The position numbers were made by a program, and so were the translations under genes. From Ylistrum balloti (lineage: Eukaryota): a stretch of DNA of 64,000 bases. The stretch is taken from contig NW_026782274.1 in NCBI RefSeq assembly GCF_031769215.1, positions 496,001-560,000 on the forward strand, read 5' to 3'. This document shows, in pieces, positions 6,369 to 36,689 of the stretch (the first letter of the stretch is position 1; the number at the start of each line of letters is the position of its first letter). The notes under the pieces are model-generated. The model saw nothing but the letters and a program-made list of their open reading frames with translations, made no database searches and was not told where the DNA came from.

Positions 6369-8226
6369 CTACGAGAATTTTACAAGATTAGTGACGTAGC
6401 CATTAGCAATCACGTATCTGAAGACGTAGAAAAGAAGGACTAAGAAACATATTTTCTTGAAGAGAAGAATCCAGCCGTCGTAAAGTCCGTCCCTCTCTCC
6501 TTCCCCTGACTGTCGCGATTTCATAGGCAGATATGTATGTTCCTCCACCCTTTCGATCGCGTTCTTGGCACCTTCCCAAGAGCCGGGACCGTCCAGGCGC
6601 CATTGTACTGGGGTAGCTGGCCCAAAATACAGTTTATACCAAAGTTTCGGATCAGAGAAGAAGTGTTTCCAGAGGTCCGGTTTACATCCGATCATTGCAC
6701 TAAGTCGGTCGAGGTACTGAATGAAGTAAACCTGCAGACTATACCTGGGAGAGTCGACATATTTCGCTTTGATAAAATCTTTGCGTTTTTCTACATGGGC
6801 AAGACGTTTGGATGCGCTAGGTAACTTAGATTTTCCAGCAAACACCCTGGTGATACATCTTGCTTGCATTTCTAAAACTGGCGGAAGCGAGCCAAACGGT
6901 TGGACTAAGCCGACAACACCGAGGGTGCATGGGTTCAAATCAGTTGGAAACATCAGTTCGTACAGATAAGGATAATGTCCTTCAATTTTGATGATTCCAT
7001 CATCAAGAAAAGGAAAATCAAAGTTGAATCCCGTAGCAAGGATGACAACATCGATGTTCTTAAGAACTGAGCCGTCGTCGAATATAGCGCCATCTGTTGT
7101 GAACTCCTTCACATTGCACTTCACATTAATAGTGCCTAGTAGGATTCTGTTCGGAAGGTCGTCGCTAATAGTGACAACACCCGCGTCAAAGCAGTAGTTT
7201 GGCGACAGGCCGTAGTTGGAATGTTTATAGCGACGATTTATACGGTGGAAGAAAACGGGTCGCATGAGACTCCAAGGCAGGCTCTGGGAAAATCTGTTGA
7301 TGGCGAGATGATCAAACGGGACGCCGTACTCTGCAGCTCTCGAGATTACATATGTCCCTCGTCGGCTTGCTACATATACCTGCAAATAGAATTATTGAAA
7401 GAATTTCACTGATTAGACCGGAAAGTTTTCTGACTGGGCGTGAAATGACAGATACAATAGTTTAGCTTAGCCACATGCAGACCAAGTAAATGATTATATT
7501 TTCATCGTGCCCATTTTCAAATTTAAGGACTTCAAAACATATTGTGATAAACTTGTCCCCTTAATGGTCAAAACAAGATCATTGTACTCTTATGCTTACG
7601 TGTTCAGCATGACGACTCAACTCGCAGGCGACATCGGAGCCGGAATTACCAATGCCGATCACCAATATTCTCTTCCCTTCGAACCCATGGAAGTCCTTGT
7701 AATCGTGAGTGTGTATGACCTTGCCTTTGAATTTATCTAGACCAGAGAATGTCGGCACATTCGGAATACTGAGGTGTCCGTTACACACAATAACAAAATC
7801 AGTCTTCACATTCCGTGATTTGCCAGTGCTTAAATTCTTCACTGACGTCACCCAACTTCCGGTGTCGTCGAAATCGTCTGCCTTTTTAACGTCCTCAACA
7901 ATGTGGCTGAAAGTTATGTAGTTCATCAGGCCAAAATTTTCTGCATAGAGTTGGAGGTATTTCTTAAAGTGTTTGTGTCCCATGAAGTTTGGGAACTCTT
8001 TGGGGATCGGAAAGTCACTGTAACAGGTCATTTCTTTACTAGTGTTAATACTACATGAGTTGTAAAGGCTTGGGTCGCCATCTTTAGACCAGTTGTGGTA
8101 ATTCCAGAGTCCCCCAATGTCCGTATCCTTCTCAAAGCATATTGGTTCCATTCCCTCGTCCAGACATTGTTTGACCGCAGCCAGTCCGGCCACACCCGCC
8201 CCTATTACCAGCACTGTTTTTGCCAT
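6369..8226 (-). CDS. Flavin-containing monooxygenase (class B, FMO family), 545 aa. Coding exons 8226-7600 and 7379-6369
   Basis: GAGVAG (FAD site), FKGKVIHTHDYK (FMO fingerprint FxGxxxHxxxY), GIGNSG (NADPH site), LATGF, hydrophobic C-terminal anchor. One phase-0 GT-AG intron (7599-7380). A pyrimidine tract plus AG sits directly before the ATG, implying a 5'UTR intron. AATAAA on the minus strand at 6095-6090. Confidence 0.95.
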
Positions 8227-16839: not shown

Positions 16840-18039
16840 TTAAACCTTGCGTTTAATGACGTAATACTGAAATATCCCGGAGTTGTCAGTGGCGACACCT
16901 ACAGATTGCACTAGACTAAACTTCTGCAATCGCCTGAAGTTAGATGATGACAGAAGAACTGGAGTGTGACCAAACGTAACCATGAACCCGTTCTCTCGAA
17001 CAGTTGGTAGTAATGCATCCAAAAGGACTTCAGCCTCGGTGGAAGTGACGACTTCAGAATTCAAGAAACGATTGAAGCACACATCAGCAGTTCCGGTTGG
17101 TATCTTTGGATCCATTGCATTTCCACAGTGCACTTCATCGACTCGTTCTCTAGCAAAATCAGCCATTTGTTGACTAAGATCTTGACCGAAAGTGTAACTT
17201 TCTGGAAATGCTTTCTGTAACGAAGAGAGAAACACCCCGGTAGAACAGGCGGGGTCGTACAACCTTCCCATTGTCATGGCAACACCACCCAAGAACTGAA
17301 CAGTATACTGTCTTATCCGTTCCTCTCCATGGCTGAGCATTGCATCATAGGTATCGTCAACCTTCCATCCCTCCGCTGGGGAACACAGCTCCTTTCTGGA
17401 GGACTCCCTAAGGAGTGGGAAGGGATAGATAATTTCGACTTTGGATGAGTCCCTAGTCATGATATCCTCAAACAGTTTAAGTTTCTCGGAATTACCTAAG
17501 GGATAATAACTGACCTGTACCTCCTTCTCAGTAATGCGCTCATCGTAAAACAAGCCCAGAATCATATCAGCTGTCACCAAGCTGCAGTGGAGTTCCGGTA
17601 TCTTCCCGGCAATCCAATAATCTGACAAAATCTTTCTTCCGACCAATCTCCACGAACCCGGAACACCAGGTTTTCCCACATCAAGGAAAAATACACTTTG
17701 TGGTAGGTGATGAAATGGCTCGTTAATACGCCTCAAGTCTCTTTCCACGATATTTTCCCATGGTATAACTCTCTCTGGAGATGTACCAGGTGGCATTTTC
17801 TTTTCTTCATATCTTCTAACCTCGCTTATGATGAGTGAGAGACATTTGTTGTCGAGGTGACTCTCAGTGGTCTTACTCAAAGCATCACATAGAAGCTTCT
17901 TCCCGGCATCCCAATTTCCTGATGACAGCAGCTTTCTCGCCTTGTGAAAGTCATTCCGGATTTCTGGGTCATGGATACTTTTGAATATACCATCGTAGCT
18001 TGTAATAGCGTCGGTACGGAGATCCAAGTCATCCGCCAT
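16840..18039 (-). CDS. Intronless class I SAM-dependent transferase, 399 aa from the Kozak-context ATG at 18039; likely 3-amino-3-carboxypropyl (ACP) transferase of the Nat/isonocardicin synthase type
   Basis: Single ORF; CAAC-ATG-G context at 18039; SAM motif I YDPACSTG, motif II GQDLS, RFLNSEVV, FGHTP; AATAAA on the minus strand at 16777-16772. The Nat resemblance is from recall of family motifs, not a search. Confidence 0.85.
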   Translation of the reverse strand: MADDLDLRTDAITSYDGIFKSIHDPEIRNDFHKARKLLSSGNWDAGKKLLCDALSKTTESHLDNKCLSLIISEVRRYEEKKMPPGTSPERVIPWENIVERDLRRINEPFHHLPQSVFFLDVGKPGVPGSWRLVGRKILSDYWIAGKIPELHCSLVTADMILGLFYDERITEKEVQVSYYPLGNSEKLKLFEDIMTRDSSKVEIIYPFPLLRESSRKELCSPAEGWKVDDTYDAMLSHGEERIRQYTVQFLGGVAMTMGRLYDPACSTGVFLSSLQKAFPESYTFGQDLSQQMADFARERVDEVHCGNAMDPKIPTGTADVCFNRFLNSEVVTSTEAEVLLDALLPTVRENGFMVTFGHTPVLLSSSNFRRLQKFSLVQSVGVATDNSGIFQYYVIKRKV

Positions 18040-18630
18040 GTTGAATACAGTTTGTAAGAAAGGGGCACATACACGTGTGTGGTACACGGAATAGGTTAAC
18101 GCCAGCTGTTATCGCACATGTAAGATTAGGGAGTCTTTATCTCACTTGTAACTACATAATCCGTCCAGAGTGACCAGTCAGACTGACCTTCGATAAACAT
18201 TTTGTTACAGGTGAGTCCATCAGCATTTGTGATTGTTTTCGAAAACAACTAAATATAGTAATATAGACAGTCATGTTTTAAAAACTAGGTTAAATCTAAA
18301 TTAAATTGAAAAGATTTTAATTAAAAAATACTGTTAATACAATTTCGATCTACTGAGAAAAAATACAGAGAACGTGTGGTATACCAGATAACACTACATG
18401 TATACAAACGTGAACACGTATGCAAAGATATCCATATTATTCAATAGGCGATACTTTGAAATACTTATTTTCAGTATTAACGTTGAGCTGTTTAGTGAGT
18501 GTAACAGCGGCTCGATCTGTCCAGTCCAACACATATCAATCAGAAAATATTCGTTCTAAAGTTGTTCTGTGCCAAGGTAATTAAGACTCTTTCATTTGCT
18601 TGTTTACTTCTGGAGATTCGGACCAACAAG
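18040..18630. promoter_or_regulatory. Putative bidirectional promoter between the SAM transferase and the divergent P450
   Basis: The two start codons (18039 minus, 18631 plus) face away from each other with 591 bp between them. Confidence 0.6.
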
Positions 18631-21600
18631 ATGGCGTCAACTGGTGTCAGTATCATCATCCACGGTGTGTTGTACTTTCTGAAATATGTCAATTATATGG
18701 TGAGTATTACTAACTTTTCGTTTAAGATGTCTAAACATTCTGAAATGATTCAATTAGATATGATTTCTCAGCATCTTATGCTAATTTTTATGTTTAAAAA
18801 AACCTGAGAAATACATGCACACATGCGCAAGTCCCACATTACACTTTTGGGTATCACATGGTAAGAAATTGCTTGAGGGATTTGAAATGACGACTCTAAT
18901 GCTGGGCACAAAAAACAATATTTGTTTGATATTCAAGAGTTTATTTTCTACATCATGACTTTCGTGCATGATATAGACAACTGACAGACAAATGCACAAC
19001 ACAGGGTTTCCAGATTTGCAAATTGATGAAAATGATGGGAAGGTTTAAATGTCTTTATAACGATCTCGTCAGGAAATATTCGGGAAGCTGGACATGTATT
19101 GATGCTTGTTAATCTGCCTCTTGGTTCCGTATTTATTTACATTGTTCTGTTTTTGGGAACGTGACATTTTATATCAGTAAGACATCTAGAAGTAAGACAT
19201 CGAGATAGCAGTACATGGTTACCGCAATGTAAATTTCAATTCAGGTACAGGAAAAATCATTATCTTCTTAAACAAAGGTTATATCAAATTGTAAAATACT
19301 GGAGTGAAACATAAAAACCATAATCACAGAGTGTAATTAACCATACTTTCATTTGTTGCAGTGCTGCAGTACAACAGTACCAGAGACTGGCGCCATTGTC
19401 AATCTGCTTTTAAACCAACTGTTCGGAGACGACAAACTGAAAAAGCTAGAATACCTTTGTCAATTTTATCATAAATTTGGTCTGTTCAAATATGAAAAGA
19501 AAATATATCTGTTTGATGAGAAACTAGCACAAACTGCCATTCATAAACTAGACAAAGGAGCAGACAACTACTTAGAAGATTCTCCACTCAAAGATACGTT
19601 TTTAGGATCTTCTCAAAAAAGTCCAGAAACAAGACGTGCTATAGCTTCTATTTTTCGTAAAACTTCTATAGATGAAAGAGGTCATGTAATGATCCGTGAC
19701 CTTGACCTTTTGTGTCGAAATATGCAAGAGGTCAGTAGCAAGTCAAGACCAGTGAATATTACCCAGTTCAGCTTAAGACTCGCTCTGGACGTAGTCGGTC
19801 ACGTGCTATTGCATCTTGACCTTGGAGGACTAAAAGGTCATCAAGATCGTCTGCTTGATTCAATGATGACCATTCTGCACAGGTAGGTGAACAAGGAGCT
19901 CAAACGTCGACGTTGTTTACTGGAGATATCTAACCGTATATAAGTAGTTTTAAGATACCCTCCTTTCTTAACGGCTAGTTCATTAACTATTTTTAAAGGA
20001 AACAATATCCTACATTTTGGTTTTACTCTTGAAGCAGTGATAAAAGTCTTTTTAAATGTGGTTTTGTTGTAATGTTAATATGATGGAGAAAGGACGGAAA
20101 TTTTATTTTTTGACTTTGTTTATTATGTGACTTATTTTGTATATGTTTTCTGGAGGTGTTACGCTCTAGCCGAAATAACTACTAACAGCAGTGAGTTCAT
20201 ACGGGCAACCGAGAACCTGGACCGTCTGACGTCACAGATCTTAGAGAACGCACTCAACAAGGATGATCAGACGGAGGACAAGAGGCTGGTTTTCCAGCTT
20301 TACGAGGCTTGTGGCTTCGAACAGGTACATATTATATCGAAATATCTATTAACATTGTGCTTATAAAAATACTAGCAGTCTTATCTACAAATTAATGATT
20401 TGAAGTTATTGATTTTAAATATGTATGTAATAACATGAATTCTAAAGAATCATATATTGAATATATTTTTTTATCATTTACGATTCAAATTAATTAAGTT
20501 GTTTTAAAAAAAAGAGTTATAAGGTAAATTGACTTTCTGAGTTTTGATAACTCGCGGTTTTTATAAAAACGTTTAAATTCCCGGTGTTCCGTGTAATGTC
20601 GGGATATACTGTTGTTTCAGGCCAAAGACAACATGAAACTGTTTCTGATGGCTGGCACAGAAACCACAGCATCTACCTTGCCGGTTATATTTTACCTTCT
20701 TACCAAGTATCCTCACATCCAGGTAATCTTTGTCTCTTACCTGTAATGTTTGTTTATCGAGGTATCATCACATCCAGATAGCCATCCTGTCTTACCTGTT
20801 ATATTTGTTTATCAAAGTATCCGCATATCCAGGTAATTTTTGTCTCTTATATTTTACCTGTCTATCGAGGTATCCTCACATCCAGATAACCATCCTCTCT
20901 TAGTTGGTATATCTTACCTGTCTATCGAGGTATCCCCACATCCAGATAGCTACCCTGTCTCACCCGGTATATTTTACCTGTTTATCGAGGTATCCTCACA
21001 TCCAGATAACTATCTTGTCTTACCTGTTATATTTTACCTGTTTATCGAGGTATCCCCACATCCAGATAGCTACCCTGTCTCACCCGGTATATTTTACCTG
21101 TCTATCGAGGTATCCTCACATCCAGATAATCATCCTGTCTTACCTGTTCTATTTTACCTGTCTATCGATATATCCCGTCATTCCATGATTAACGATACAA
21201 AGTGTTCACTTGTCCTTCATTTCATTACTCCGTCATAATTTCGTTTATGTTCATCACTTCGGATACAGATATTGAACTGTAATACGGCAATGTACGAGGA
21301 TGTAACGATTAGTATACACACAACTATTGTTACATAATCATGCAAGTCTGCTTCTGATTTTAAAATGATAATTATTATTTACTAACTTTAATAAGCTTGA
21401 TTTAAACCTGGAGAACCTTGCAATGGGAATTTTTAGTTTACCCAAAGTGTTAACAATGCATTTTTTGCATGAATTATTACTATAACATTAAGAGTTTGAA
21501 TTCGTGGATTTCGACTTGGTTAATCATTTTTTTGGCACTCGAAAACAGCTTTATCTTTTGGAAAAAGACTAATAGGATAAAACTGCAAAATTATAAGGCA

Positions 21601-23234
21601 CAACGACCCACTTTTTAATCATGAAAATGTTCATATGAAAGCATAAAGTCTTTTTAAAAGATTAGTACACGATCAAATAAATCATTTTCAAAATTTTCAC
21701 TTTTTGGTTGCAGTGCAGTTTTAAGATCGTAAAATTAAATGAAAATCTAACATTTCCCCTTAATTTTCTATCATTTAGTTGTCATTCTACTACCTTTTAA
21801 TAAAAGAGGAAAACATATTGCCTCGAAAATAACAAAGAATGCCTATTATGGAGTAAAAAAATAATAATGATTGATGAAGGGTGGATTATCTCCCGTTACA
21901 TATATATATTCTGCATTTTTGCTTTTAAAATTGAATTTGATCAATTTGGCCTCTAGACCTTTATACATCCTTTACAACCTTAACAAAGTCGATAACACTT
22001 ACAAAATATAAACATCTCCTTCGTTCCCTGCAGAAACTTTTGTGTTTTTCCGACACATCTAGTTCTTCATAGTAGGTCACGTGATATACTATATGTCTGT
22101 TTTTATAATATCACACTTCTAGTTTAGAACATTCTTCAGATGATGTAAATGATAATGTTCGCTTTATTTGTTTGTTTGGAACGTTGGAAACAAACTCACA
22201 AAATACGTTTATGTACAATTAGATGGAACTCCAGGCTGAAGCTGATGAAAATATAGACAGTTTACGGAAAGACCCGAACTTCCCTTTGCCGAAGATAGAT
22301 AGCGTTATGAAGGAGGTACTCCGATTGTATCCTATTGCGCCTTTCATCAGTAGACAGAACCACGGCCCCGTGACTATAGGCAAGATTGATCTGCAGGAAC
22401 ATGTAAGTTAAACGTTACAGTCGTGTTATTTGAACACCTAGTTATGTTACCATAGTGAAATACATCTACATGAATTATGGTTACGTTACCATAGTAACTA
22501 CTTATACGATTTTCTTAACAATTAGGTTGTTATGGCAATCACTCAGGTCATATTTAAACATCTTATCATAGTGTTGCATTCATGTTGTCGTTATAGTTTA
22601 GATATAGTCAAGTGACAATAACAATGTATAGTTACCATTACAACTCTACGTTTAATGTCTGTTGTCAATTTTCCCATTCATAACGGTCACAACGTCTTTC
22701 TAAAAAATAATGCATATGTTATTTTGTATGTTTGGATAATTTAGCAAATGTTCGAAGCACGGCTAATTTATCATGGATATCAGGACCTAGGTAATCCTGT
22801 TCAATATTTTATTCAATGCCAAAAATGACTAACATCAGTTCCTTGGAATGTAAACAGTATACTAATATTGGCTTTTTTGTCGATTGCAGAGCGACCTGCT
22901 GGTATTTACCTGGGGGATTCATAGATCACCATACGCGTGGGACCATCCGCATGACTTCGTACCTTTTCGCTTTTACGAAAGCACTTCCAAAAATCATAGT
23001 TCAAATTTATACATTCCATTCGGTGCCGGATCGCGAGTTTGTATTGGTCAGCACCTAGCGTGGCTCGAGATCCGATTGGCTATTGCGATTTTGCTCAATA
23101 AATTTGATTTCAGGCCAACAGAGGAGACTCCTGACCTTCGGTTTGTGGTAGACTGGACACATGCCGTAGTTCATCCGGACAAAGACATGTTGTTCATGGC
23201 TGTTCCACGTACCAAACCATTTAATATCACTTGA
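18631..23234 (+). CDS. Divergent cytochrome P450, 461 aa. Exons 18631-18699, 19362-19882, 20156-20324, 20621-20722, 22223-22402, 22890-23234
   Basis: Exons join in phase (1386 nt). Hydrophobic N-terminus, AGTETT (I-helix), EVLR (ExxR), PFRF, FGAGSRVCIG (heme Cys). AATAAA at 23532 and 23619. The exon-3 acceptor is an uncommon GAG. Family not recognisable by eye. Confidence 0.9.
20675..21180 (+). repeat. 55-60-bp minisatellite derived from the 3' end of P450 exon 4 and its donor
   Basis: TATCCTCACATCCAG-like core at 20708 (real exon end), 20763, 20818, 20871, 20931, 20991, 21051, 21111. ORFs across the array repeat exon-4 peptide pieces (YPHIQ, LPVIFYL). Confidence 0.93.
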
Positions 23235-24281: not shown

Positions 24282-24510
24282 AAACAATTAGATACAATAG
24301 TCAGATATTTATCATAACAAAGGCATATGTACATATATAAACAATTAGATACAATAGTCAGATATTTATCATAACAAAGGCATATGTACATATATAAACA
24401 ATTAGATACAATAGTCAGATATTTATCATAACAAAGGCATATGTACATATATAAACAATTAGATACAATAGTTAGATATTTATTTATTACAAAGACACAT
24501 GTATATATTT
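24282..24510 (+). repeat. 57-bp tandem repeat, about 4 copies
   Basis: AAACAATTAGATACAATAG at 24282, 24339, 24396, 24453. Confidence 0.93.
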
Positions 24511-25530
24511 ATGTCTAAAAGAAAGTAAGAAATGTTGTTGTATTCTTATGTAAGTTCAAGTAATTGGGATTGAATAACTGTAGCAGTTGAATTCGAACAT
24601 TCAGAGGTTCATATCAAAAGATTAAAACTGAACAAATAATTAGTCAATTAACATTCAATTAAAGGACTTACTCTAATAACATTGTTCCAGTTATCAAACA
24701 CAGCAGTATCGAGAGTGCTTGTAATAAAAAAATTTCATTAAATCAAACATGTTGAAACAAGTACATGGTGCCTTTATTCCTTGGCTACAAGAAAGTTGCC
24801 ATGTATCCACACACAATCTGCTGAATCTAAGACATCAGGTTGCGTAGCTCTGATAAAGCTTTTTCATTCTCCCAGTCCTCTTCGCCATGATTAAATTCGA
24901 AGCGTAGGGGTTCCAACTTATCTGCTGGAGCTTCCTTGGAATTCACGGAAAAGTATTGATTTTATTTTCGGTGATATATTGATGTCCCGGCTTCCCTTTA
25001 AATTTCCACACTTGTGAGTCTTGGTATCATTGAAAGTCCTGAAAGGTCGAAACATTTTAATGGTTCTATTATTTATAAGACAAATTATTGACTTTGTATT
25101 GAATTCAGATTAATATTTTAATGGGTGTATTTTATAAAACTCTTTTGTTCAAGCTAATAATTATTCATATCACTTCTTCCTAAGAGGTGAGTGTCGATTT
25201 GGACCACCTGGTAAGTTTACATTTGTGGATCAGGTTTGACCAAAAGGTGTTAATTGGGGAGGGGGAGATGGAGTAGGGTAACATTCATAATTTTTCATAT
25301 TTTAACGAAATACGTAATATTTTTGTAATCTTCATCTTGCATCAGGCAATACGAAAGCTGTAGATCATAAAATCGATTGAAAAAAACTCATAGTAGGTCA
25401 CGGTGACCCAGTTTTATAACTGCTAGATTATGTAAAAGATATACTTTCTCTTGTGCGTAAATACACATTTATCATGATATGTTCTAATAAGGTATAGTTT
25501 GCATTGTTTAAAGGATGGAGAATAAGTAAT

Positions 25531-25562
25531 GGGGGTGGAAGGGTGGGAATGGGTGGGAGGGG
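25531..25562 (+). other. G-quadruplex-capable G-run cluster
   Basis: GGGGGTGGAAGGGTGGGAATGGGTGGGAGGGG: at least four G3 runs with short loops. Confidence 0.5.
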
Positions 25563-28500
25563 CTACTTTCTTGGCATCCACCCATCATTTGATTATAAAA
25601 TATTATCAATGAATGTATGAGAATATATAACCCATTAATCTATTTTATATGTAAAAGAAAACCTTGAATGACACTTCAATGATAGTAAAAACTGAGATTG
25701 CCTATTTATGTGGCATTCTGTGATCAACAAGAGCTCTCAACTTTCATTTAAATACATATTTTCTGTGCATAACACACTTTCATTCAAAATTTTGTAACTA
25801 ACATAAATCACATTTATTCAATTAGAGAAACATTGAGTGATTCAAAATGGATTTTCGAATGAAAAATACATTTTCATTCTGATGTTTTTATGTGCAAAAT
25901 TCGTTTATATAATTTGGGATATACGCAAATATGATACAAACAAAATTCAAAGTAGACTTACAGTTGAAGCTTGAATAACGTGACATATCTGCTCATACTA
26001 AGGTCAATAGTTCAAATGATTAATGAGATCTTACAGGTATACCTAAAGGCCAGTTTCTGTTACGTGACCACCTAGTGACTGCGGTGCTTCCAAACTATAT
26101 TAACTTGACCTGCTGTCCTTTGTTTACCACGAACTTGGTGACCAGTGTCGCGGTTATAAACAAAACGACATGTAAATAAATACTGAGGATAACTCAAAAT
26201 AAAGAAAATAAGAATTAATGTTTAGATATTTGCCCAGGGAACAAAATGCAAAGAGTATCAGACAATGTGTTCTAGAAGGGTAAGAACCTTTACATTCGTC
26301 ACGTGTATCGTAATTTATTTCATGATCTCAAAATGAGGAATCGGGTATTGATGATTAAAAAACACACAGAAACAAGCGTTGGGAATTATCACACTTATCA
26401 TACCAATTAGTTGTGATATATTTGTGTTTTAAGATCATTTAGATGTCAGTTATAAATTGAGCCAGGTCATATGCTATCCAAACGAAAGCTGTTTTGATAA
26501 AGGATTGTTTATGTAAGGATCCAAGTCAGTACATAATTATTGTGATCATGAATAGATGACTTGAAATGTATAATTGTATATACAAAAGTACTTAATGTTT
26601 TCTTCTGTAGAAGGCTGGAAAAAGGAAGCTTGTTCGTGATGAAGCCAGTGGTGTCATGCATGTCAACTTCAATGTGATGAAAAAAATCAAAACAAAATGC
26701 CCCTCTCTCTCCTCTTCTTTCACACACAGTATATTATAAGCTGGTACTTTATGTTCAATATTAAGTAAGGAAACTAGATTGTACAATATCTAGATCTCCA
26801 TTATCACGATCTTACCTAACCTTACACGCAGTATATTGTGATTAGGGAGCACTTCTCCTGAGAGATAGTGAAGTTCTCCTCGACCTAAGTACTTCGCCTT
26901 ATGTTGGTACGTGTGAATCAGTGCTCCCTATACAAGTCTGTTTGTTCAGTGTAGCCCTCAGTACATCACGTTCTCAAAGCTATAAATGGATTCTTACCTG
27001 CATATATAGTACTTACCTTGTCTGATAAGTACTGTCTAATTGGCCTCCATTATCTTAGCAGATATATTAAGCTCATTTTATTTTCACTTGTTAAGTAATA
27101 AAACAAAAAAAAAATAATCTTAATCCTGTTACAAATTACTGAAAAAAAATTAACACTACACGAAAAAAAAACAATTCTTATTAATAATGAATCGATTGTA
27201 ATAGATCAAGAAGTGAGATTAAAAAGTAAATTGTTTCGCTGACATATTGAAATTGATATTATCTTTGATGCAAGAGAAGAACAAAACTCCGCCTTGTGTC
27301 TAATTAAAAACAGGAATATAACACTATAATAAAAGTAATATAATACTGTTAGTTGTTTATCTACCCACAAACAAAATTGAACAATGACAAACAGCATACT
27401 CACGATTCAATGGTAGTATATGATTGTGTCAAAAAGAGAAAATTTCAGTGATAACGACGTAAAAGATTTATGTACACCAGTAAAGAAAATACCAACATAC
27501 CAATAGAGTCTTAACATAATTTTAACATCAATGAACTGGGGGTAAAATATCAAGGAAAGAAAGTCTGACACCGGCTTTGACAGAGAAAGTTTCCGTACTT
27601 TATTGACGACACTTGCCATGTAAATTATGGTCAATCCAATGTAATGTTCTCAAATAAGAGTTAGTTAAACAACATCGGACCATCAGGCATGCTAACGAGA
27701 ATCGAACATGAAGATTGAACAAAAAATGCACAAGTAAATAGCACATTTTAATACAAATTTTAAGATGATATCCTAGAGCCAAACGATGAAATAAACTGCA
27801 TCATACAGCTGTTTCGCTCTCCTAGGATTCATCAATGATGCTAAGGACCTAGATTTTAAACCTATGAGGCAACAGAGGAAAATCCAAAATGATTGAAAGA
27901 AATGTCAAAATCTAGATAATGAGGTGCACTAGCCTCATAGTTTGGTAAATTTAATAAATTTCAAATCTCTGATAATTAAAAAAAGTGTTAAGTACATGTA
28001 TTTATCATATTCATCAATTTAAAAAAAATGAACATGGTAGCTCCACAATTTAACGCTTAACTGTCATCACAATATACAAAGAAAAACCTTATCTTTATAT
28101 ACGTATACAGGTGCACTATTGTCTTCTGGTCAAATAAACATTGGATAAATCCAATGTAATCATATTAAAACAAAACATGCATCAGTATTTTTCCGTCTGT
28201 AATACAGTGTCCCAGTGAGCAAATTCTGCAGTAAGTCTGTTGTCATTTTATTCAAATAAATGGTACATACCTTTTTTTGTTTTTATCATAGTTCAAAGAT
28301 CACATCTATAAAGTATTGTTAACGTTGACATTGTTTGTTTTATGAACAAAACACATAAAATACATAAATGATACATACATATGAAAACAATAATATGATT
28401 TTTTATTATGTTGTGTATAAACAATTCTAGTAGCCCGAAGGAGTTCAACATTGGGTGTATATGCTTATGCTTGAGTGAAGAGAAAGTAAAAGGCTTAAAG

Positions 28501-31258
28501 TAAAAGAAATTGCGGTAGTGTACATGCAAAATTTCATCATATGTGGACAAATGTAAACCATGAAAAGAATACAGCGAAGTATTGTTGTGCACTTTATGGT
28601 TATTAAGTAATTACTTACTTGGTTGTATTGGATGTTATTCAAGAGGAAACATCTTGTTAATCAAATCCTGTTTTCTTACTTATGGCGCTTAATAACACGA
28701 GAACGAAAATATCTGCCTTAGATTTGAATGGAAATTGACATTTTCTATTTATATTGCAAGAAACATTAAGTAATGCTCCTATGAGCTATGAGTTTGGATA
28801 CTTTGAGAAACAATAATGTTCCGTCTTGAAAAAAAACTATTAAAGTTTGTATTTATTTATTTATCTATTTATTTATATACTTATTTATTGATTTTTTTAT
28901 TGATTTATTCTTTATGCTTCGCCCACTTGTCATCGATTTGAATTTGAATACGAATTTGTCAACTGTATCTCCTTGTTGTTTCACTAATAGCGTCACTATC
29001 TCAGCGCATTACAGTTCTCTCTAAACCTAGAATTTCGATTATGGTCAAGTCGTGGTCATCTTCATGTCCAGTAGTTTGTACTAACTGGCCTATTCGGTTC
29101 TGAAAGGTCAAAGGGGATTATGAAGCCTCCGAATATAAGGCAAATCTTTCAGAAGTAGATAAAGGTAGACATCGAACAACATGCAGTAATTAGACTAGTG
29201 TCACCCACAAACCTAAAATTTTGGAGAAAAAAAATGCAATTTTGTTTACACACAAATAACGGTAAGTAAGCATGTACTTGTGTTTTATTATTAAGTGCTG
29301 CCATTAAGGAGTGGGTTAGGATTTTTCACGTTTTTTTAACAATAATAATTCATCAAATTGATTTTGCATAACAACAATCACAAGCATATGCTCTTTTTAT
29401 TGATGATCTTAAACAAAATATTTACCAGTTATCTATATCTTTTAAATTCTAGATCGGAATTTTAAAAATTTAACTCAATATTTTCCTTAAAGATTAAGCC
29501 AGTGACAAAAGTATGTATGGTGTTTTTTGTGCGTTCGTCAGAAATGAAAATGTATGAAATCGGGAAAAGTTTTCATCATCAAAATTGATGTAGAATATAT
29601 ACCTTCGCGAACAACTTTCCACCTGTTTTAATCATTATTTTGTATTCATTTTTTGTGTCTTTTGTACAATTTTTAAAATTGCAACTGGTAGATTTTCAAT
29701 CTTCGAGATTTCCGTGACCTGCACACCACGTTAAAAAAAACTTATAATAGACAATTGGCCTAGTGTATTTCTTTCTTTCTGGAGGTCGTATTATTGCACA
29801 CGTCCGATTATTGCACTGTTTACAGCTTCGCAGGCATGCAAAAAACATCTCTTTTAGAAAATCAATGTCTTCGCGCATTGCATATCATTGACAACTGTGT
29901 CTTAGTTCATCTATGGCTCAGAGGCCTCATCAGTAGTAAGTAGCTAGGTGTTGTATAGTTGTTCGTTTTATTTCTCCATGCTGCAAACTGATCATATACA
30001 CCGCAATCAAGAGAATGTCAATGTAAAGAATCTGCCAGCATTTGTTCATAAAAACATCTAATAACACACCCTCAAGGATATCATAGGTTGTGCTCCATCG
30101 CAGATGCGTTTCAATACATGTATACTCATACGTTAGCAACTTGTTCTTGGAAACAGCAAATAATACCATGACTAAAGGGCGGGTCAGTAGTGTGAACAAA
30201 TGTGGGATAGGTGAACAAATGAGGAAATTATAAAGGAAAACAAAAGTAAATATTCAAGTTATCGGTTTGTGTAACTACATGAATGTCCTGTTCTTTCTCC
30301 TTCATACATCAAACAATTTTGATTTATAGCATTATGACATTTTCGCATATTGTTAAATCCTTAGCGTTTTAGTTTTATTACGTTTTATGTCCAATTGAGA
30401 ATGCTGATGTAAATTTACGCCTGAGATTAAATGACACAACATGACGTCAATGGATTTACAAACTAGTTGCTGTGAAATTAGATATTCATACAATTTTCAT
30501 GGTATTTCAAGAAAAGAAATACTGTTACGTGGATACTTTCAATAGTTCATCGACTACCTATTACATACACGGTCACCCGAGTTACAATGTTTCTTGTAAT
30601 ATATCATAGAAAGAAATATTTTTTTCAGAGTAAAGATTATTTTAACTACATTGTAAACATAATACAAAACTTTTGAAATCCCAACTTAGTATGGCTTTAC
30701 AACATGACTACTAAAAATTTAACTGTCTGTAAAGGTAATTTTTGGTGTTTAGACACAGATTCGAGACTGCCCAAATCGTAATCTCCATCACAAAGCAAAA
30801 ATATAAAGACCACACCAAGACTTCTAATTTAAACTTTTATAATGGGGTAATCTAATGCACAAAAACTGTGTACTGCTACCAGAAAAAAGGACTTAACAGC
30901 TGTTATAATTCACTACAGTGTCTGATTTTCAATTTGTATTAAATTGTGCTAAATGTGTGCCTTTTACACAACGATGTCTTTTGTAAATTTCAGGTAAATG
31001 TATATATTCTGAATCCAATAACCTTTGAAATATATTTAATGCGTAAAATATTGTCGCCATGTTAAGAATTTTTCAGGTTTAAGTCTACAGAACATATATA
31101 TGATTTTGTCTGTGGAGACTATCAAGCTTAAATACCACATCTGATATTTTTCTTAGGTGTTCATTTCATTTCCAAAAAGGAATCGAAAACATCAACAATA
31201 TAGTGATAGATACTGTCAACACTGTTGAACTTTCATTTATTACAGGTTTACAGCCAGA

Positions 31259-34200
31259 ATGCCTGTGATTGATATCCCTGACATTACGTCATGCACGAGC
31301 TATATCGCCGCGCTAGATTCCGATCGGTCAATTCCTAGCGCTGTCATTGGAGAAGGTAATCTGCTTCTGTCTTGCCTAGAATATTTGACAGATGCCAGCT
31401 TCACTATTTCAGCCGTCTTCACAGATACACCTGTAGTCAAAACCTTCTGCGAAGAGAAGAAAATACTTCAGTGGAAAAGAGGAACAGATATCGAACATGC
31501 CCTGAGAGATATTCCAATTGACTATCTTTTTAGTATATCTAATCCTAGAGTTTTGACAGATTCTGTATTACAAATACCCAGAAAACTGTCAATCAACTAC
31601 CATGATTCACCACTTCCCAGATATGCTGGAATCCACGCAACCAGCTGGGCCATCATCAATGGCGAATCGAACCATGGTATTTCCTGGCACGTAATCGAGA
31701 CGGGTATCGACACTGGAGATATTCTCCAGACAAGAGCAGTTAAAATTGATCCTGACGATTCTGCATTCACATTAAATATGAAATGCCAAGAAGCAGCCAA
31801 ATCAGCATTCCAAATTCTGATCAAGGATGTTAAACAGGACTGCATTAACCGAACGACACAACCGGTTTCTGGAAGGTCGTATTACGGGTTGCATGCCATA
31901 CCGCCAAACATTGGAGTCCTTAATTTCCAGACGTCCTGTACAAATATCTGCAATCTTGGAAGGGGACTGGAGTTCGGAACTCATGACAATGCACTTGGAA
32001 GCCCCAAAGTTATGACATCAACAGGCGATTTTGTGCTCGTCACAAATGTCGAAGAATCTAATTGCAGTTTTGACGAACATGTTAAACATGGAACTATCAC
32101 AGAAATAGTTGACGATACTTTGGTTGTCAAAACGCAGGGAAACTCGGTTTTGCTGTCAATTACAAAATTGGATGGATCCCATCTGTCGCCATCAGAATAC
32201 AGCGATCTTGGGATATCGGTTGGTGAAAAGCTTTCAAGTAATTTTGCGGTAGACACGGAAAATCTGACACAAATAAGAAAGAAGGAGACATTTTGGAGAA
32301 GAAAGTTAAAGATTTATGATCCAACGACATTTTTCCGACAAAGAATGAATGTGGTTGCAGGTATCATAGATGTTTCTACAGCAATCAACGTCAAGTCGAT
32401 CGTTATTCCGCTACCCGTCCCAAACATGAATGGACACAGCTTCCATACACATACTTGTGAACTTCTTATGTCAGCATTTGTTGCATTCATCGGACGAATG
32501 ACTTGTAACTCGAATGTCTCTCTCGGTATCCTGGCAAACAAGTCGACTGTACCCGAAATGGCAAGAGGACTTTACTCTGACATCTGTCCAGGAGTATTCA
32601 CCGTCGATCTACAGCAGAAAACACATGTTGTCTTGCATGACCTTTACGAAATGATAAAAACTTACAGAGAGGCACAATCGTTCTTAGTAGATGCGTTTTA
32701 CAGGTACCCTGAACTCCGTGGACAAAAGAGAACACCTCACCATAACATAGCGATAGGCCAAATTCCTAGTCATGCGTCAGCTACCGGTGTTGCACAGCAC
32801 GTTCTTCATGACTGCAACATATTGCTACTGTTTAATGACGACGGAGATGAGATGCATTTGATGTACAAGGAAAAGATCGGTCAAGATTTCCAATATATCA
32901 GTGATGTTCTTCAGCACTTCCCAACATTTCTCACTACTAGTGACCTGAATCAGCCTTTGCACGAGACTCATCTAGTCTCAGACGAGGAACTTAAACAACT
33001 TTATCTACAGCCTCTTCCTTTCAAGCCGTCAACCAAAAGCGTTTATGACGTTTTCGAAGAACAGTGTAGGTCTAGTCCAAATAACATAGCTCTGCGGTCA
33101 TCAGCTACATCATACACCTACAACCAGTGTAACGAGTTAGCAATGAAGGTTTCATGCCTTCTTGATGCCACATATGAAGATGAAAGAATCATTGGACTTC
33201 ATTTTCCAAATTCAATGGAATATGTAGTCTCCGTCATCGGCGTTTTGAAAACCAATCGTGCATTTCTGCCACTTCCCATAGATTACCCTGAAGAAAGGAT
33301 GACTTTCACTCTGCGAGATGCAAAAGTCCATAGTATGTTGACTACCGCCTCAGTTTATGAAAACCTGAAATCTAAGGGATTTTCATTGACACAGGTAGGA
33401 GCAGATGCTGTGCAGATAGATCGTAATGAAGTAATACTTGTTCGATTTGCGAAAAATGAGAACAAGGTGAAAGGAAATGAAAATGACTTTGTCCATATCA
33501 TTGATGGAAAGGCAAAAAAAGGCGGCGTCCAGACTGGCAGAATTCTGAATGGACATGAGGAATGTGGAAGGACAAAAAATGGAGAATGCGATGCTGATGA
33601 CTTTAAGATTCTCCAGAACAATGGCTTTACTTCAAAAATGACGAGTCAGATATTAGATGAGGAACTTTGTTACGTGATGTATACGTCAGGTTCCACTGGT
33701 AGACCTAAGGGAGTTCAAGTAAGCCACTCCGGTGTCGTCAATCTCGCTAAAGCGCAGATAGAGCTCTGGAGTCTTCACGATGGTGATGTGATTGCCCAAT
33801 TCGCCTCCATTGGATTCGACGCGACGGTATCTGAAATATTCACAGCCCTATTTTCTGGTGCAACTCTCGTTACTCTTTCCGACGAAGAACGTTTAGGCCA
33901 GGAATTCATCCGTACGTTAAACATGCTGGATGTGAATACAATCACACTGCCCCCATCCGCCCTCAACATATACAGTCCAAACGACCTACCCAAACTAGAA
34001 AAGGTTGTTACCGCTGGAGAAGCCTGTTCGCTAGGAACTGCCCTCAAATGGACGGTCGACAACAAGACAATAAGATTCTTCAACGCATACGGCCCGACTG
34101 AAACAACTGTTTGTGCAACATGTTATGAATTCAAATCGTCCGATGTCCACGTCGACAACACTCAAGACTTACCAATTGGCATGGCCATACCTGGCATGAG

Positions 34201-36268
34201 TGTATATCTTTTTGACAACTTCATGAAACCAGTTCCTCCTGATGTTGTTGGCGAGATCTACGTAGGAGGTATTGGTGTATCCAAGGGATACATCGGTCAC
34301 GCAGCGGAGCACAACTTGGAACGATTTGTCCAGAATCCAATGACAGATCAGCTTTGCCTGTTATACAAAACAGGCGATCACGCGTTTCAATCAAATGATG
34401 GCAATATCACTTACATCGGGAGGTTGGATGACATGATAAAGATCAGGGGCCAACGAGTTGACCTTAGTGAAATTGAGCAAGTTCTGATTCAACATACAAA
34501 GGTGGAACTTGCTGTCGTTGTAGCACATAGATGTACAGACTCGAATGAGATTAGTATAGCGGCGTATGTGGCACCTTCTTTCGTGTACTTGTCGGAATTA
34601 CGGGAGTACTTGACGAAAGCTCTTCCAAAATACATGATACCGACGTTCATTAAGAAAATTGAGGTAGCTGACTTCCCAATGACACTGAATGGCAAAATAG
34701 ACAGAAAACGTCTTGAAAAAGACGAATCTGTACATGAACAATCAAGATTTGGTGGAGGCAGTCATCTAAACGAAACGCAACTTGCTATAGCTCAACTTTG
34801 GTGTACAGTTCTCAAACTTAACGAATCGATAATACATGAATTTCACCGCCAGACATCTTTCAGTGAACTCGGCGGCAACTCTTTGCAGTTGGTGCTCCTA
34901 CAGCGTACGTTAGAAGACAAGCTCCATATCCAGTTGTCGTTTACAGACCTAGGTATGGCAGATACGATAGAGGAATTCTGCGACGTCATCAGAAGAAAGA
35001 AAGATATGCTCCGAAGATCTAATCAAAACAATTCAAATGATCTGCGTGATCTTCGTCAGGTAATAGTGCAGGATTCTATTCTAGATCCATCGATCATACC
35101 TCAACATGCTAGGCGTGGCTCTATTAAGTTCAGTCACTTCTCGGCGTTTGTACAGAAATGTTCCATGAAATACCCAAGGAACGCTCTAATGTCAGGCGTG
35201 ACCGGATTCCTGGGGGCGTATCTCCTGTCTGAACTTCTTGAACAAACAAACGCTCATGTGTGTTGTATGGTTCGAGAATCTACAGAGGCAAGGGGATTCG
35301 GTAGAATAGTTGAAAATCTCAGAAAGTACAACTTATGGAAAGTAGAATATGGGAGTAGAATCGCGGTAGTGATATCCGACCTATCACAGGAAAATCTCGG
35401 TATAGCGCCAGACATTTACACGGCACTTTGCAACGTCATCGATGTTGTATTCATGAATGCAGCCAAGATGAATTTCAACACTGATTATGATGACCACAAG
35501 GTTGCAAATGTCGACAGTACCAAGGAATTCATCAAATTCGCTGTAACAGGCACTCAGAAATATATATTTTCAACGTCATCGTTGAGCGTTTTCCTCTTCC
35601 CCAACAGCCCTTCCAGCACACCACCAACCAATCGAATGTGTTATGAGACCGAGTTCTGGGATGACCCTTGCACCTTAGAAGGGGGCTATGGAAAAAGCAA
35701 ATGGGCAAGTGAAAAATTGGTCGTGCAAGCACTCGAGTACCTCCCTGGCGGAGCTATATTCCGACCAGCAAGAATATCTGGATGCTCTTTTGACGGCGCT
35801 GGTCCAAGGAACGACCTTTTCGCGTCTACCTTAATCGGTATGACGCAATTAGGGTCGTTTCCCGACATGGACTTTCCCTACGATCTCACACCAGTGGACT
35901 ATGTAGCCAAGGCAATGGTGGAAATCTCTCTGCAGATTTGCAACGACAGTAACCATCATGAACATGTTTATCATCTGTTCAATTCTCAGACAATTCCTTT
36001 TAAGGACATTTTCAAAGGAATGGGTCTGAAGTCTCTTCCTCTTGAACAATGGCGCCAAGAACTCCGAAATGCATCTGACGACAGCAAGGTCCTTATCCCG
36101 TTTACACCGTTTTTCCATTCCGAGTTTTGGGACAAGGCGCCTCACTGGCCAGTATTTGACACTTCAAACACAGACAGACTTACCAGCGACCGCACAAAGG
36201 AACTATTGAAACCTTCAAAAGACCTCTTGTGCTTGTACAAAACATATTTTGGTCTAAATACCAAATAG
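31259..36268 (+). CDS. Monomodular NRPS, 1669 aa: formyltransferase (N and C subdomains), relic condensation lobe, adenylation (Tyr-type code), PCP, terminal NAD(P)H thioester reductase (FmtATR-like)
   Basis: F domain: NYHDSPLPRYAG and GIDTGD (Asn113, His115, Asp151). A domain: YVMYTSGSTGRPKG, FDAT, NAYGPTE, GEIYVGG..GY, YKTGD, GRLDDMIKIRGQRVDLSEIE, LPKYMIP, NGKID. T domain: LGGNSL (Ser1208). R domain: SGVTGFLG, STSS, YGKSK. Uninterrupted 5010-nt ORF; spliceosomal acceptor TTTATTACAG ends at 31245. Confidence 0.97.
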   Translation: MPVIDIPDITSCTSYIAALDSDRSIPSAVIGEGNLLLSCLEYLTDASFTISAVFTDTPVVKTFCEEKKILQWKRGTDIEHALRDIPIDYLFSISNPRVLTDSVLQIPRKLSINYHDSPLPRYAGIHATSWAIINGESNHGISWHVIETGIDTGDILQTRAVKIDPDDSAFTLNMKCQEAAKSAFQILIKDVKQDCINRTTQPVSGRSYYGLHAIPPNIGVLNFQTSCTNICNLGRGLEFGTHDNALGSPKVMTSTGDFVLVTNVEESNCSFDEHVKHGTITEIVDDTLVVKTQGNSVLLSITKLDGSHLSPSEYSDLGISVGEKLSSNFAVDTENLTQIRKKETFWRRKLKIYDPTTFFRQRMNVVAGIIDVSTAINVKSIVIPLPVPNMNGHSFHTHTCELLMSAFVAFIGRMTCNSNVSLGILANKSTVPEMARGLYSDICPGVFTVDLQQKTHVVLHDLYEMIKTYREAQSFLVDAFYRYPELRGQKRTPHHNIAIGQIPSHASATGVAQHVLHDCNILLLFNDDGDEMHLMYKEKIGQDFQYISDVLQHFPTFLTTSDLNQPLHETHLVSDEELKQLYLQPLPFKPSTKSVYDVFEEQCRSSPNNIALRSSATSYTYNQCNELAMKVSCLLDATYEDERIIGLHFPNSMEYVVSVIGVLKTNRAFLPLPIDYPEERMTFTLRDAKVHSMLTTASVYENLKSKGFSLTQVGADAVQIDRNEVILVRFAKNENKVKGNENDFVHIIDGKAKKGGVQTGRILNGHEECGRTKNGECDADDFKILQNNGFTSKMTSQILDEELCYVMYTSGSTGRPKGVQVSHSGVVNLAKAQIELWSLHDGDVIAQFASIGFDATVSEIFTALFSGATLVTLSDEERLGQEFIRTLNMLDVNTITLPPSALNIYSPNDLPKLEKVVTAGEACSLGTALKWTVDNKTIRFFNAYGPTETTVCATCYEFKSSDVHVDNTQDLPIGMAIPGMSVYLFDNFMKPVPPDVVGEIYVGGIGVSKGYIGHAAEHNLERFVQNPMTDQLCLLYKTGDHAFQSNDGNITYIGRLDDMIKIRGQRVDLSEIEQVLIQHTKVELAVVVAHRCTDSNEISIAAYVAPSFVYLSELREYLTKALPKYMIPTFIKKIEVADFPMTLNGKIDRKRLEKDESVHEQSRFGGGSHLNETQLAIAQLWCTVLKLNESIIHEFHRQTSFSELGGNSLQLVLLQRTLEDKLHIQLSFTDLGMADTIEEFCDVIRRKKDMLRRSNQNNSNDLRDLRQVIVQDSILDPSIIPQHARRGSIKFSHFSAFVQKCSMKYPRNALMSGVTGFLGAYLLSELLEQTNAHVCCMVRESTEARGFGRIVENLRKYNLWKVEYGSRIAVVISDLSQENLGIAPDIYTALCNVIDVVFMNAAKMNFNTDYDDHKVANVDSTKEFIKFAVTGTQKYIFSTSSLSVFLFPNSPSSTPPTNRMCYETEFWDDPCTLEGGYGKSKWASEKLVVQALEYLPGGAIFRPARISGCSFDGAGPRNDLFASTLIGMTQLGSFPDMDFPYDLTPVDYVAKAMVEISLQICNDSNHHEHVYHLFNSQTIPFKDIFKGMGLKSLPLEQWRQELRNASDDSKVLIPFTPFFHSEFWDKAPHWPVFDTSNTDRLTSDRTKELLKPSKDLLCLYKTYFGLNTK

Positions 36269-36689
36269 AGGAAGCACGCAAACATTTTCTAATCAAAACT
36301 CATTATTGTGCAGTTCTTCTTTTCGGTTAAACCTCTTCATCCTGTAGTAAAGTCTCTTGTCCAATACTCGTGTCACATGACACTTTCTGTAAGGAGGTTT
36401 AGAAAATTATACAGTGTCTTAAATGTGTAACAATATTTTTGCTGAAATCCACTATATTCATTCCAAAGACATTAGTCCATTTCTGAGTGGATTATCATCA
36501 CAGAAAGGTGTAATCATAATCGGACATAACGATTGTGGTTACAATGGGAGGAAGGGGGATATTTCAGGTAGTAGTATTCTCAAGAGTCCCAGACTCATAT
36601 TTTTCACATCGTATAACTTAAGACAGTGTTGCAAGATAACAATCAAGGTATCTTTGACAAGCCGTTTTATCATTTAACCCTATTTCCTC

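What the first reader, a model, noticed from the sequence alone, without database searches (positions are those of the whole stretch)
31259..36268. Formyltransferase-A-T-R NRPS with a tyrosine specificity code (DASTVAAVCK)
Aligning the A4-A5 region by hand to GrsA gives D235 A236 S239 T278 V299 A301 A322 V330 C331 K517 = DASTVAAVCK (coded at about 33818-34114, Lys near 34695). That is the Stachelhaus code for Tyr/beta-hydroxy-Tyr in glycopeptide NRPSs. The formyltransferase catalytic Asn/His/Asp, the PCP Ser1208 and the reductase GxxGFLG and YxxxK motifs are all intact. The enzyme should therefore load Tyr, N-formylate it from 10-formyl-THF and release it reductively as tyrosinal or tyrosinol. 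Animal NRPSs are few (Ebony, AASDH, nematode nemamide enzymes), and this architecture differs from those.
Basis: partly seen in the sequence, partly recalled or inferred. Interest (0 to 1): 0.9.

Follow-up and report, generated by a model that had tools for sequence, protein, structure and literature searches.

The report
Scallop copy of published FmtATR synthetase

Summary
Window 31259-36268(+) is one open 1669-codon frame with formyltransferase, adenylation, carrier and thioester-reductase domains.

- **Catalytic residues:** N113/H115/D151, Ser1208, GVTGFLG and YGKSK are all present. All are conserved in about 40 mollusc orthologs.
- **Selection:** dN/dS against Pecten maximus is 0.09.

That paper reports the pathway in scallops. 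It showed experimentally that an oyster T-R construct reduces N-formyl-Tyr thioester to N-formyl-tyrosinol. The window also holds the other cluster genes: an isonocardicin-synthase-like aminocarboxypropyltransferase, P450 genes and an FMO.

Two details may be new:
- The formyltransferase is a full two-subdomain ArnA/Met-tRNA-FMT type, not the short LgrA type.
- It is followed by only the C-terminal lobe of a condensation domain (residues 331-573, no HHxxxDG). Bacterial relatives share this arrangement.

A-domain and formyltransferase activities remain untested anywhere. I obtained no RNA evidence. The scan had noted this same stretch once more (s1-258914), not other DNA. Verdict: real, correctly read, already known.

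The parts
31259..36268 (+). Complete single-exon coding sequence of the FmtATR ortholog (1669 aa plus stop)
   Evidence: Orthologs in Pecten maximus and Mytilus californianus are also single-exon.
31331..32236 (+). Formyltransferase domain, residues 25-326, with N and C subdomains. Catalytic N113 (31595-31597), H115 (31601-31603), D151 (31709-31711).
   Evidence: Pfam Formyl_trans_N. Weak Formyl_trans_C hit. AF2 pLDDT 88.7. Z 29 to the ArnA formyltransferase domain 1-304 and Met-tRNA formyltransferase 1-314. Triad invariant in orthologs and bacterial relatives.
32249..32977 (+). C-terminal lobe only of an NRPS condensation domain, residues 331-573. No N-lobe and no HHxxxDG motif.
   Evidence: No Pfam hit. 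AF2 pLDDT 82.8. Foldseek matches C domains at E 1e-8. VIA-align Z 16-17 to residues of about 180-450 of EntF, AB3403, RzmA-Cs, CDA-C1 and McyB C domains. dN/dS 0.07.
33053..34696 (+). Adenylation domain, residues 599-1146. Code residues at 33818-34114 and K1146 at 34694-34696 give DASTVAAVCK.
33419..33658 (+). Poorly conserved, charged insert of about 80 aa inside the A domain (residues 721-800), between the N-terminal part and the SGSTGxPKG motif
   Evidence: Conservation of 4-11% in non-pectinid orthologs. dN/dS 0.49 against 0.07 for the rest of the A core.
34787..34990 (+). Carrier (T/PCP) domain, residues 1177-1244. Phosphopantetheine Ser1208 at 34880-34882 in GGNSLQ.
35186..36214 (+). Thioester reductase domain, residues 1310-1652. 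GVTGFLG at 1313-1319 and Y1477/K1481.
   Evidence: PF07993 at 168 bits. TIGR01746 scores 207.8 bits, just under its 213.35 cutoff. Motifs. dN/dS 0.039.
16840..18087 (-). Neighbouring single-exon aminocarboxypropyltransferase (ACT) gene, isonocardicin-synthase-like
   Evidence: Methyltransf_25/11 hits. Homologs are named isonocardicin synthase-like. It is 76% identical to a Mizuhopecten protein on the same 312-kb contig as the Mizuhopecten NRPS.
19353..23234 (+). Neighbouring multi-exon cytochrome P450, head-to-head with ACT. Exons seen at 19353-19886, 22223-22411 and 22884-23234.
   Evidence: Pfam p450 hits on the last two exons. ORF list.
6369..8226 (-). Neighbouring flavin monooxygenase in two exon-sized ORFs (7579-8226 and 6369-7385)
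   Evidence: FMO-like hits covering profile positions 1-211 and 208-530

Best explanation
This is the scallop ortholog of FmtATR, the single-module NRPS of the mollusc bur-ox (bursatellin/oxazinin) gene cluster. The proposed mechanism has four steps. The A domain adenylates L-tyrosine and loads it on the phosphopantetheine of Ser1208. The N-terminal ArnA/FMT-type formyltransferase moves a formyl group from 10-formyl-THF to the tethered amino group. The C-terminal SDR-type reductase uses NAD(P)H twice and releases N-formyl-L-tyrosinol. The clustered ACT, P450 and FMO enzymes then add the homoserine ether, the beta-hydroxyl and the nitrile. Shown here are the domain set, the intact catalytic residues, the Tyr-type code, orthology, clustering and purifying selection. 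Shown in the literature, for the oyster ortholog only, is T-R reduction of N-formyl-Tyr thioester to the alcohol, and for the mussel ACT, its activity. The tyrosine activation step, the formylation step and the order of steps are inferred. The half condensation domain between Fmt and A is most likely a non-catalytic scaffold that keeps the usual C-A platform. That last point is inference.
For: The code DASTVAAVCK follows from alignment to 1amu and is conserved as DAST[V/I]AAVCK in about 40 mollusc orthologs, with the Fmt triad, PCP Ser and reductase motifs also conserved. The protein is 77-82% identical to scallop proteins, 58% to Mytilus californianus LOC127698786, and 42-49% to Haliotis and Aplysia, all with the same architecture. 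Cluster partners lie in the window. The published model and experiments are in PMC11869996. dN/dS is 0.09 overall, 0.093 for Fmt, 0.07 for the C-lobe and 0.039 for R. The ORF is intact in a second DNA sample. The gene lies in AT-rich animal DNA with retroelement fragments, on a 765-kb contig.
Against: No enzyme activity has been measured for this protein. In the literature the full-length enzyme, the A domain and the Fmt domain could not be assayed reproducibly, so tyrosine loading and formylation are predictions everywhere. The oyster T-R accepted several N-acyl aromatic thioesters, so the reductase does not set specificity. I obtained no transcript evidence for this species, because the only run laid proved to be DNA. 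The Tyr assignment of the code rests on memory and on antiSMASH as quoted in the paper.
Confidence: 0.82

Rival explanations
1. The enzyme is the same, but the A domain's true substrate is a modified or different aromatic amino acid, such as beta-hydroxy-Tyr, O-aminocarboxypropyl-Tyr or Phe. The order of steps would then differ from the published scheme.
For: The paper states that the order of reactions is ambiguous because ACT and T-R are promiscuous. The pocket differs from the Phe pocket of GrsA/TycA mainly by W239S, which enlarges its base. The closest PDB pocket matches include engineered TycA variants that carry Ser at this position. From memory, the same code is used for beta-hydroxy-Tyr in glycopeptide NRPSs.
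Against: antiSMASH calls the ortholog Tyr-activating. The code is a 10/10 match to a natural Tyr code (from memory). N-formyl-tyrosinol is accepted by the downstream ACT.
Confidence: 0.1
2. The Fmt domain is not an active aminoacyl-S-carrier N-formyltransferase (inactive scaffold or hydrolase). The enzyme would then release plain tyrosinol or tyrosinal, with formylation occurring elsewhere or not at all.
For: Formylation has never been shown for any FmtATR. Some oxazinins contain unformylated tyrosinol. The Fmt domain is only distantly related to the one proven NRPS F domain, LgrA (E about 5e-4 against 1e-14 for ArnA).
Against: The N/H/D triad and the HxSxLPxxxG-type motif are invariant from bacteria to molluscs. 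dN/dS is 0.093. The full folate-dependent formyltransferase fold is predicted at Z 29. Bursatellin is N-formylated.
Confidence: 0.06
3. The ORF is bacterial contamination, a recent insertion or a dead relic rather than a working animal gene.
For: The ORF has no introns. Its GC content is 43% against 32-33% in the flanks. Outside molluscs the nearest relatives are bacterial.
Against: The gene lies inside a 765-kb contig between intron-containing animal genes and retroelements. Single-exon orthologs sit on chromosome-scale scaffolds of Pecten maximus and Mytilus californianus. The best bacterial match to the N-terminal 29-620 query (Fmt, half-C and start of the A domain) is only about 31% identical. 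There is strong purifying selection. The frame is intact in a second sample.
Confidence: 0.02

Closest known systems
FmtATR of the mollusc bur-ox cluster (Mytilus spp., Crassostrea virginica; Venugopalan and Schmidt 2025, PMC11869996)
   Same: It has the same Fmt-A-T-R order and the same DAST[V/I]AAVCK code. It is a single exon, as is the Mytilus californianus ortholog. It is clustered with ACT, P450 and FMO. It is 58% identical over its full length to the M. californianus protein.
   Different: It comes from a different species (a pectinid). It carries an extra, poorly conserved insert of about 80 aa in the A domain. The window shows one FMO and two P450 genes, whereas the published Mytilus cluster has two FMOs and one P450. 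No biochemistry exists for this copy.
LgrA initiation module (F-A-T) of linear gramicidin synthetase
   Same: It has an N-terminal folate-type formyltransferase that would act on the carrier-tethered amino acid. LgrA is the best PDB match for the A-T region. The N/H/D triad is shared.
   Different: The LgrA F domain is 193 aa and abuts the A domain (PMC10510592). Here Fmt has two subdomains (about 300 aa) and is nearest to ArnA and Met-tRNA FMT. A half condensation domain separates it from the A domain. LgrA continues into further modules, whereas this enzyme ends in a reductase.
Bacterial NRPS initiation modules with Fmt, half-C and A (unnamed; Acidobacteriota, Chloroflexota, cyanobacteria, Legionella, Myxococcota and others)
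   Same: They show collinear homology across Fmt, the C-lobe and the start of the A domain (27-37% identity).
   Different: The eight bacterial proteins examined are multi-module synthetases carrying C domains, and four of them also a TE. None is close enough to name a donor.
Tyr-reducing A-T-R enzymes of fungi and bacteria (for example LnaA/HqlA type, AusA), recalled from memory and not tested here
   Same: An aromatic amino acid is activated and released reductively. AusA and MxcG models match the A-T-R part.
   Different: They lack a formyltransferase. They usually release aldehydes that cyclise or dimerise. Scores are far below their NCBIfam family cut-offs.

Membership tests
FmtATR (bur-ox NRPS of molluscs) | One polypeptide with the order formyltransferase, adenylation, carrier, reductase | tested here: met
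   Pfam hits in that order
FmtATR (bur-ox NRPS of molluscs) | Full-length orthology to the proteins named in the paper | tested here: met
   58% identity over 98% of the query to Mytilus californianus LOC127698786, and 77-82% to other scallops. The Crassostrea virginica sequence could not be identified by name among the hits.
FmtATR (bur-ox NRPS of molluscs) | Tyrosine-type A-domain specificity code | tested here: met
   DASTVAAVCK by alignment to 1amu, conserved in orthologs. The Tyr meaning of the code comes from memory and from antiSMASH as quoted in PMC11869996.
FmtATR (bur-ox NRPS of molluscs) | Genomic clustering with an isonocardicin-synthase-like ACT, a P450 and an FMO | tested here: met
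   ACT at 16840-18087(-), P450 at 19353-23234(+) and FMO at 6369-8226(-)
FmtATR (bur-ox NRPS of molluscs) | [quoted passage not shown] | not testable with these tools
   Shown only for the oyster T-R construct. The motifs are intact here.
LgrA-type formylation domain | Short F domain of about 190 aa directly fused to the A domain | tested here: not met
   Fmt spans residues 25-326 with a C-terminal subdomain. A C-lobe at 331-573 lies between it and the A domain. The match to LgrA F has E of only about 5e-4.
Folate-dependent formyltransferase superfamily | Asn/His/Asp catalytic triad and the full fold | tested here: met
   N113/H115/D151 are invariant. Z 29 to ArnA and FMT.
NRPS condensation domain (for residues 331-573) | Two-lobed fold with an HHxxxDG active site in the N-lobe | tested here: not met
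   Only the C-lobe aligns (target residues of about 180-450). There is no Pfam Condensation hit for this protein and no HHxxxDG.
NRPS thioester reductase (TIGR01746 / PF07993) | GxxGxxG nucleotide motif and a YxxxK catalytic pair | tested here: met
   GVTGFLG at 1313 and YGKSK at 1477. PF07993 scores 168 bits. TIGR01746 scores 207.8 against a cutoff of 213.35.

The most novel reading that the evidence does not exclude
The N-terminal half of FmtATR may define a structural class of NRPS initiation module that I did not find described in the two NRPS papers I read for this (PMC11869996, PMC10510592). It would consist of a full two-subdomain ArnA/FMT-type formyltransferase fused to only the C-terminal lobe of a condensation domain, followed by the A domain. 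The arrangement is conserved under purifying selection in molluscs and shared with hundreds of bacterial synthetases. The half-C lobe would act as the platform that positions the formyltransferase for the carrier domain, which differs from the LgrA solution.
Probability: 0.4. Interest if true: 0.4.

Novelty: already known. Interest (0 to 1): 0.27.

Why it matters
The gene belongs to one of the few animal-encoded NRPS pathways, and that pathway is clustered with its tailoring genes. This makes it a real and interesting piece of animal natural-product biology, found in a food animal. The pathway was published in 2025 and scallops were already listed as carriers, so the value here is confirmation. 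The report also adds a precise annotation of one more ortholog and its cluster. Two things could still help the field. First, the A and Fmt activities of this enzyme class have never been shown, because the mussel and oyster proteins misfold, so another ortholog is one more candidate for expression. Second, the domain map given here (two-subdomain Fmt, half-C lobe, variable A-domain insert) suggests better construct boundaries than a simple Fmt | A-T-R split.

Tried and rejected
1. **RNA evidence.** The only run offered for the gene (X1) gave a 6.5-kb contig collinear with 30827 to about 37372, with no joints. I first read this as an unspliced transcript bracketed by TATA-like and AATAAA signals. 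X1 also holds 58% of the words of the intergenic stretch 24600-29600, so it is a DNA run. The contig therefore says nothing about transcription or splicing. It only shows that the frame is intact in a second sample.

2. **Literature check of the code.** Searching for the code string found no paper. The bur-ox paper's supplements are not held, so I could not see which scallop species or accessions it lists.

3. **Bacterial donor.** 415 bacterial loci carry the Fmt, half-C and A arrangement, but the best is only 31-32% identical and they are spread over many phyla. No donor can be named.

4. **On-carrier beta-hydroxylation by an OxyD/NikQ-type P450.** The last exon of the clustered P450 matches CYP17, CYP97, CYP3A and BM3-type enzymes in the PDB. 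No OxyD/NikQ-type enzyme appears among the 60 best matches shown, and the first exon matches nothing. There is no support for this idea from these tools.

5. **Pfam on residues 330-600.** It found nothing for this protein. Only the fold search revealed the C-lobe.

6. **Contamination or pseudogene.** Rejected; see the rival explanations.

Full report
**The sequence.** Window 31259-36268(+) is a single open frame of 1669 codons. It is the only long ORF in an AT-rich region: the ORF is 43% GC and the flanks are 32-33%. Pfam places five domains in order:
- Formyl_trans_N at 72-184
- AMP-binding at 599-1011
- AMP-binding_C at 1071-1146
- PP-binding at 1177-1244
- NAD_binding_4 at 1313-1553

NCBIfam adds the amino-acid adenylation model above its cutoff. 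It also hits the thioester-reductase model at 207.8 bits, just below the 213.35 cutoff.

**The specificity code.** A HMMER alignment of residues 835-1000 to chain 1amu_A prints the chain in GrsA numbering. Reading it column by column gives D235=D854, A236=A855, W239=S858, T278=T896, I299=V917, A301=A919, A322=A943, I330=V951 and C331=C952. The A10 lysine is K1146. The best PDB matches for this pocket segment are the Phe-activating TycA and GrsA. The pocket differs from theirs mainly by W239S, I299V and I330V. That fits an aromatic substrate with a para substituent.

That this exact code is a Tyr/beta-hydroxy-Tyr code is my recollection of Stachelhaus et al. 1999. I could not find the string in the paper library. 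The bur-ox paper reports that antiSMASH calls the ortholog's A domain tyrosine-activating.

**Other motifs.** The Fmt residues N113, H115 and D151, the PCP Ser1208 (GGNSLQ), the reductase GVTGFLG (1313-1319) and YGKSK (1477-1481) are all present. In a MAFFT alignment of about 40 full-length mollusc orthologs the code is DAST[V/I]AAVCK in nearly all. The Fmt triad, carrier serine and reductase motif are also conserved. The exception is a Mya protein that lacks the Fmt triad.

**What it is.** A whole-protein search finds same-architecture proteins across molluscs:
- Pecten maximus, 82% identity
- Mizuhopecten yessoensis, 80%
- Argopecten irradians, 77%
- Mytilus californianus, 58%
- Many other bivalves, 52-58%
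- Haliotis, 49%
- Aplysia, 42%

The window therefore comes from a pectinid scallop. The family is published. Venugopalan and Schmidt (JACS 2025, PMC11869996) describe FmtATR as the NRPS of the bur-ox cluster (nrps, act, p450, two fmos) in Mytilus. They report the pathway in oysters, clams, abalones and scallops and predict N-formyl-L-tyrosinol as the product.

Their experiments gave two results. The Crassostrea virginica T-R didomain reduces N-formyl-Tyr-CoA or -SNAC to N-formyl-tyrosinol with NADPH. The mussel ACT makes the phenolic homoserine ether. Full-length enzyme, A-T-R and the Fmt step could not be assayed reproducibly, and the order of steps is left open.

**The cluster is in the window.**
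- ORF 16840-18087(-) is a SAM-methyltransferase-fold protein. Its homologs are named isonocardicin synthase-like. It is 76% identical to a Mizuhopecten protein on the same 312,184-nt contig as the Mizuhopecten NRPS. In Sinanodonta the two genes are three locus tags apart.
- Head-to-head with it lies a multi-exon P450 at 19353-23234(+).
- An FMO in two exon-sized ORFs lies at 6369-8226(-).
- A second P450 exon lies at 2651-3004(+).
- Retroelement RT fragments lie at 12011-13371(-) and 45984-47494(-).

**Is it a working animal gene?**
- The orthologs in Pecten maximus (L081) and Mytilus californianus (L082) sit on scaffolds of 53 and 127 Mb. Their gene spans equal 3 x (protein length + 1), so they are single-exon too.
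- dN/dS against Pecten is 0.093 overall (dS about 1.09). By region it is 0.093 for Fmt, 0.07 for the half-C region, 0.067 for the A core, 0.039 for R, and 0.49 for the insert at residues 721-800.
- A second DNA sample (X1) carries the frame with 29 substitutions, 13 of them amino-acid changes, none at a catalytic or code residue, and no stop or indel inside the ORF.
- I have no RNA evidence. X1 also holds the intergenic stretch 24600-29600 and is therefore a DNA run.

**Finer anatomy.** This part may add to the paper.

Residues 185-598 have no significant Pfam hit but are 35-50% conserved among non-pectinid orthologs. An AlphaFold2 model of residues 1-335 has pLDDT 88.7. Its residues 25-326 align at Z 28-29 with the whole formyltransferase domain of ArnA (1-304) and with Met-tRNA formyltransferase (1-314), C-terminal subdomain included. 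By sequence, ArnA, sugar N-formyltransferases and FDH hydrolase domains score E 1e-14 to 1e-11, while the LgrA F domain scores about 5e-4. LgrA's F domain is only 193 residues and abuts its A domain (PMC10510592).

A model of residues 320-612 has pLDDT 82.8. It matches NRPS condensation domains by Foldseek at E 1e-8. VIA-align gives Z 16-17, but only to their C-terminal lobes: EntF 179-434, AB3403 191-459, RzmA-Cs 181-430 and CDA-C1 201-448. There is no N-lobe and no HHxxxDG. The architecture is therefore Fmt(N+C) - half-C - A - T - R.

Eight bacterial multi-module NRPSs from the first search align collinearly across Fmt and at least the start of the half-C. Several, such as P0056, P0070 and P0065, align right through to the start of the A domain. 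Identities are 27-37%. A scan of one genome per bacterial species found 415 such loci in Acidobacteriota, Chloroflexota, cyanobacteria, Legionella, Myxococcota, Desulfobacterota and others. The best is 31-32% identical. The arrangement is therefore inherited from bacteria as a block. The transfer is old, since it is shared by bivalves and gastropods, and no donor can be named.

**Mechanism.**
- Shown here: all catalytic motifs are intact and under selection, the pocket is Tyr-type, and orthology and clustering hold.
- Shown elsewhere: four-electron reduction by the orthologous T-R, and ACT chemistry.
- Inferred: Tyr adenylation and loading on Ser1208, formyl transfer from 10-formyl-THF to the tethered amine by the N113/H115/D151 site, and a scaffold or docking role for the half-C lobe in place of the usual C-A platform.

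**Rivals.** Three alternatives are kept at low weight: a modified aromatic substrate or a different order of steps, an inactive Fmt domain, and contamination or a relic gene. The P450's last exon resembles CYP17, CYP97, CYP3A and BM3-type enzymes, and no OxyD/NikQ-type carrier-dependent hydroxylase appears among the 60 best matches shown. I therefore found no support for beta-hydroxylation on the carrier.

**Verdict.** The enzyme class, its predicted product and its presence in scallops are already published, so the finding is already known. The modest additions are the domain map (two-subdomain ArnA-type Fmt, half-C lobe, variable A insert), the selection analysis, and the annotation of this scallop's cluster. 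The scan's earlier notes on this window cover the same stretch and its neighbours and agree with this reading.

Noticed in passing
window 33419-33658 (residues 721-800): There is a charged, low-conservation insert of about 80 aa inside the A domain. Identity to non-pectinid orthologs is 4-11% and dN/dS is 0.49. It looks like a lineage-variable surface loop.
   Followed up: partly
window 2651-3004 (+): This is an exon of a second cytochrome P450 (Pfam p450 positions 238-315), convergent with the FMO at 6369-8226(-). The published Mytilus cluster lists one P450 and two FMOs, so the scallop layout may differ.
   Followed up: partly
window 12011-13371 (-) and 45984-47494 (-): Reverse-transcriptase (RVT_1) ORF fragments of retroelements flank the cluster genes.
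   Followed up: no
window 20684-21176 and 24282-24508: Tandem repeats are present: units of 60, 120 and 180 bp inside a P450 intron, which produce a spurious 132-aa ORF, and a 57-bp unit repeated four times in the P450-NRPS intergenic region.
   Followed up: no
loci L001-L080 (bacterial genomes): Hundreds of bacterial NRPS genes share the formyltransferase, half condensation domain and A arrangement. They include Anabaena, Planktothrix, Legionella, Nannocystis and many Acidobacteriota and Chloroflexota MAGs.
   Followed up: partly
proteins P0121, P0122 and P0181 (Mizuhopecten); P0015/P0024 (Potamilus); P0026/P0032 (Sinanodonta); P0040 (Mya): Several bivalves carry two or more paralogs of the ACT or of the NRPS. 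A Mya arenaria paralog lacks the Fmt triad and carries ankyrin repeats (PF12796).
   Followed up: no
window 31217, 36406, 36515 and 36614-36639: Small indel polymorphisms between the window and DNA run X1 lie only outside the ORF, in the upstream and downstream flanks.
   Followed up: partly
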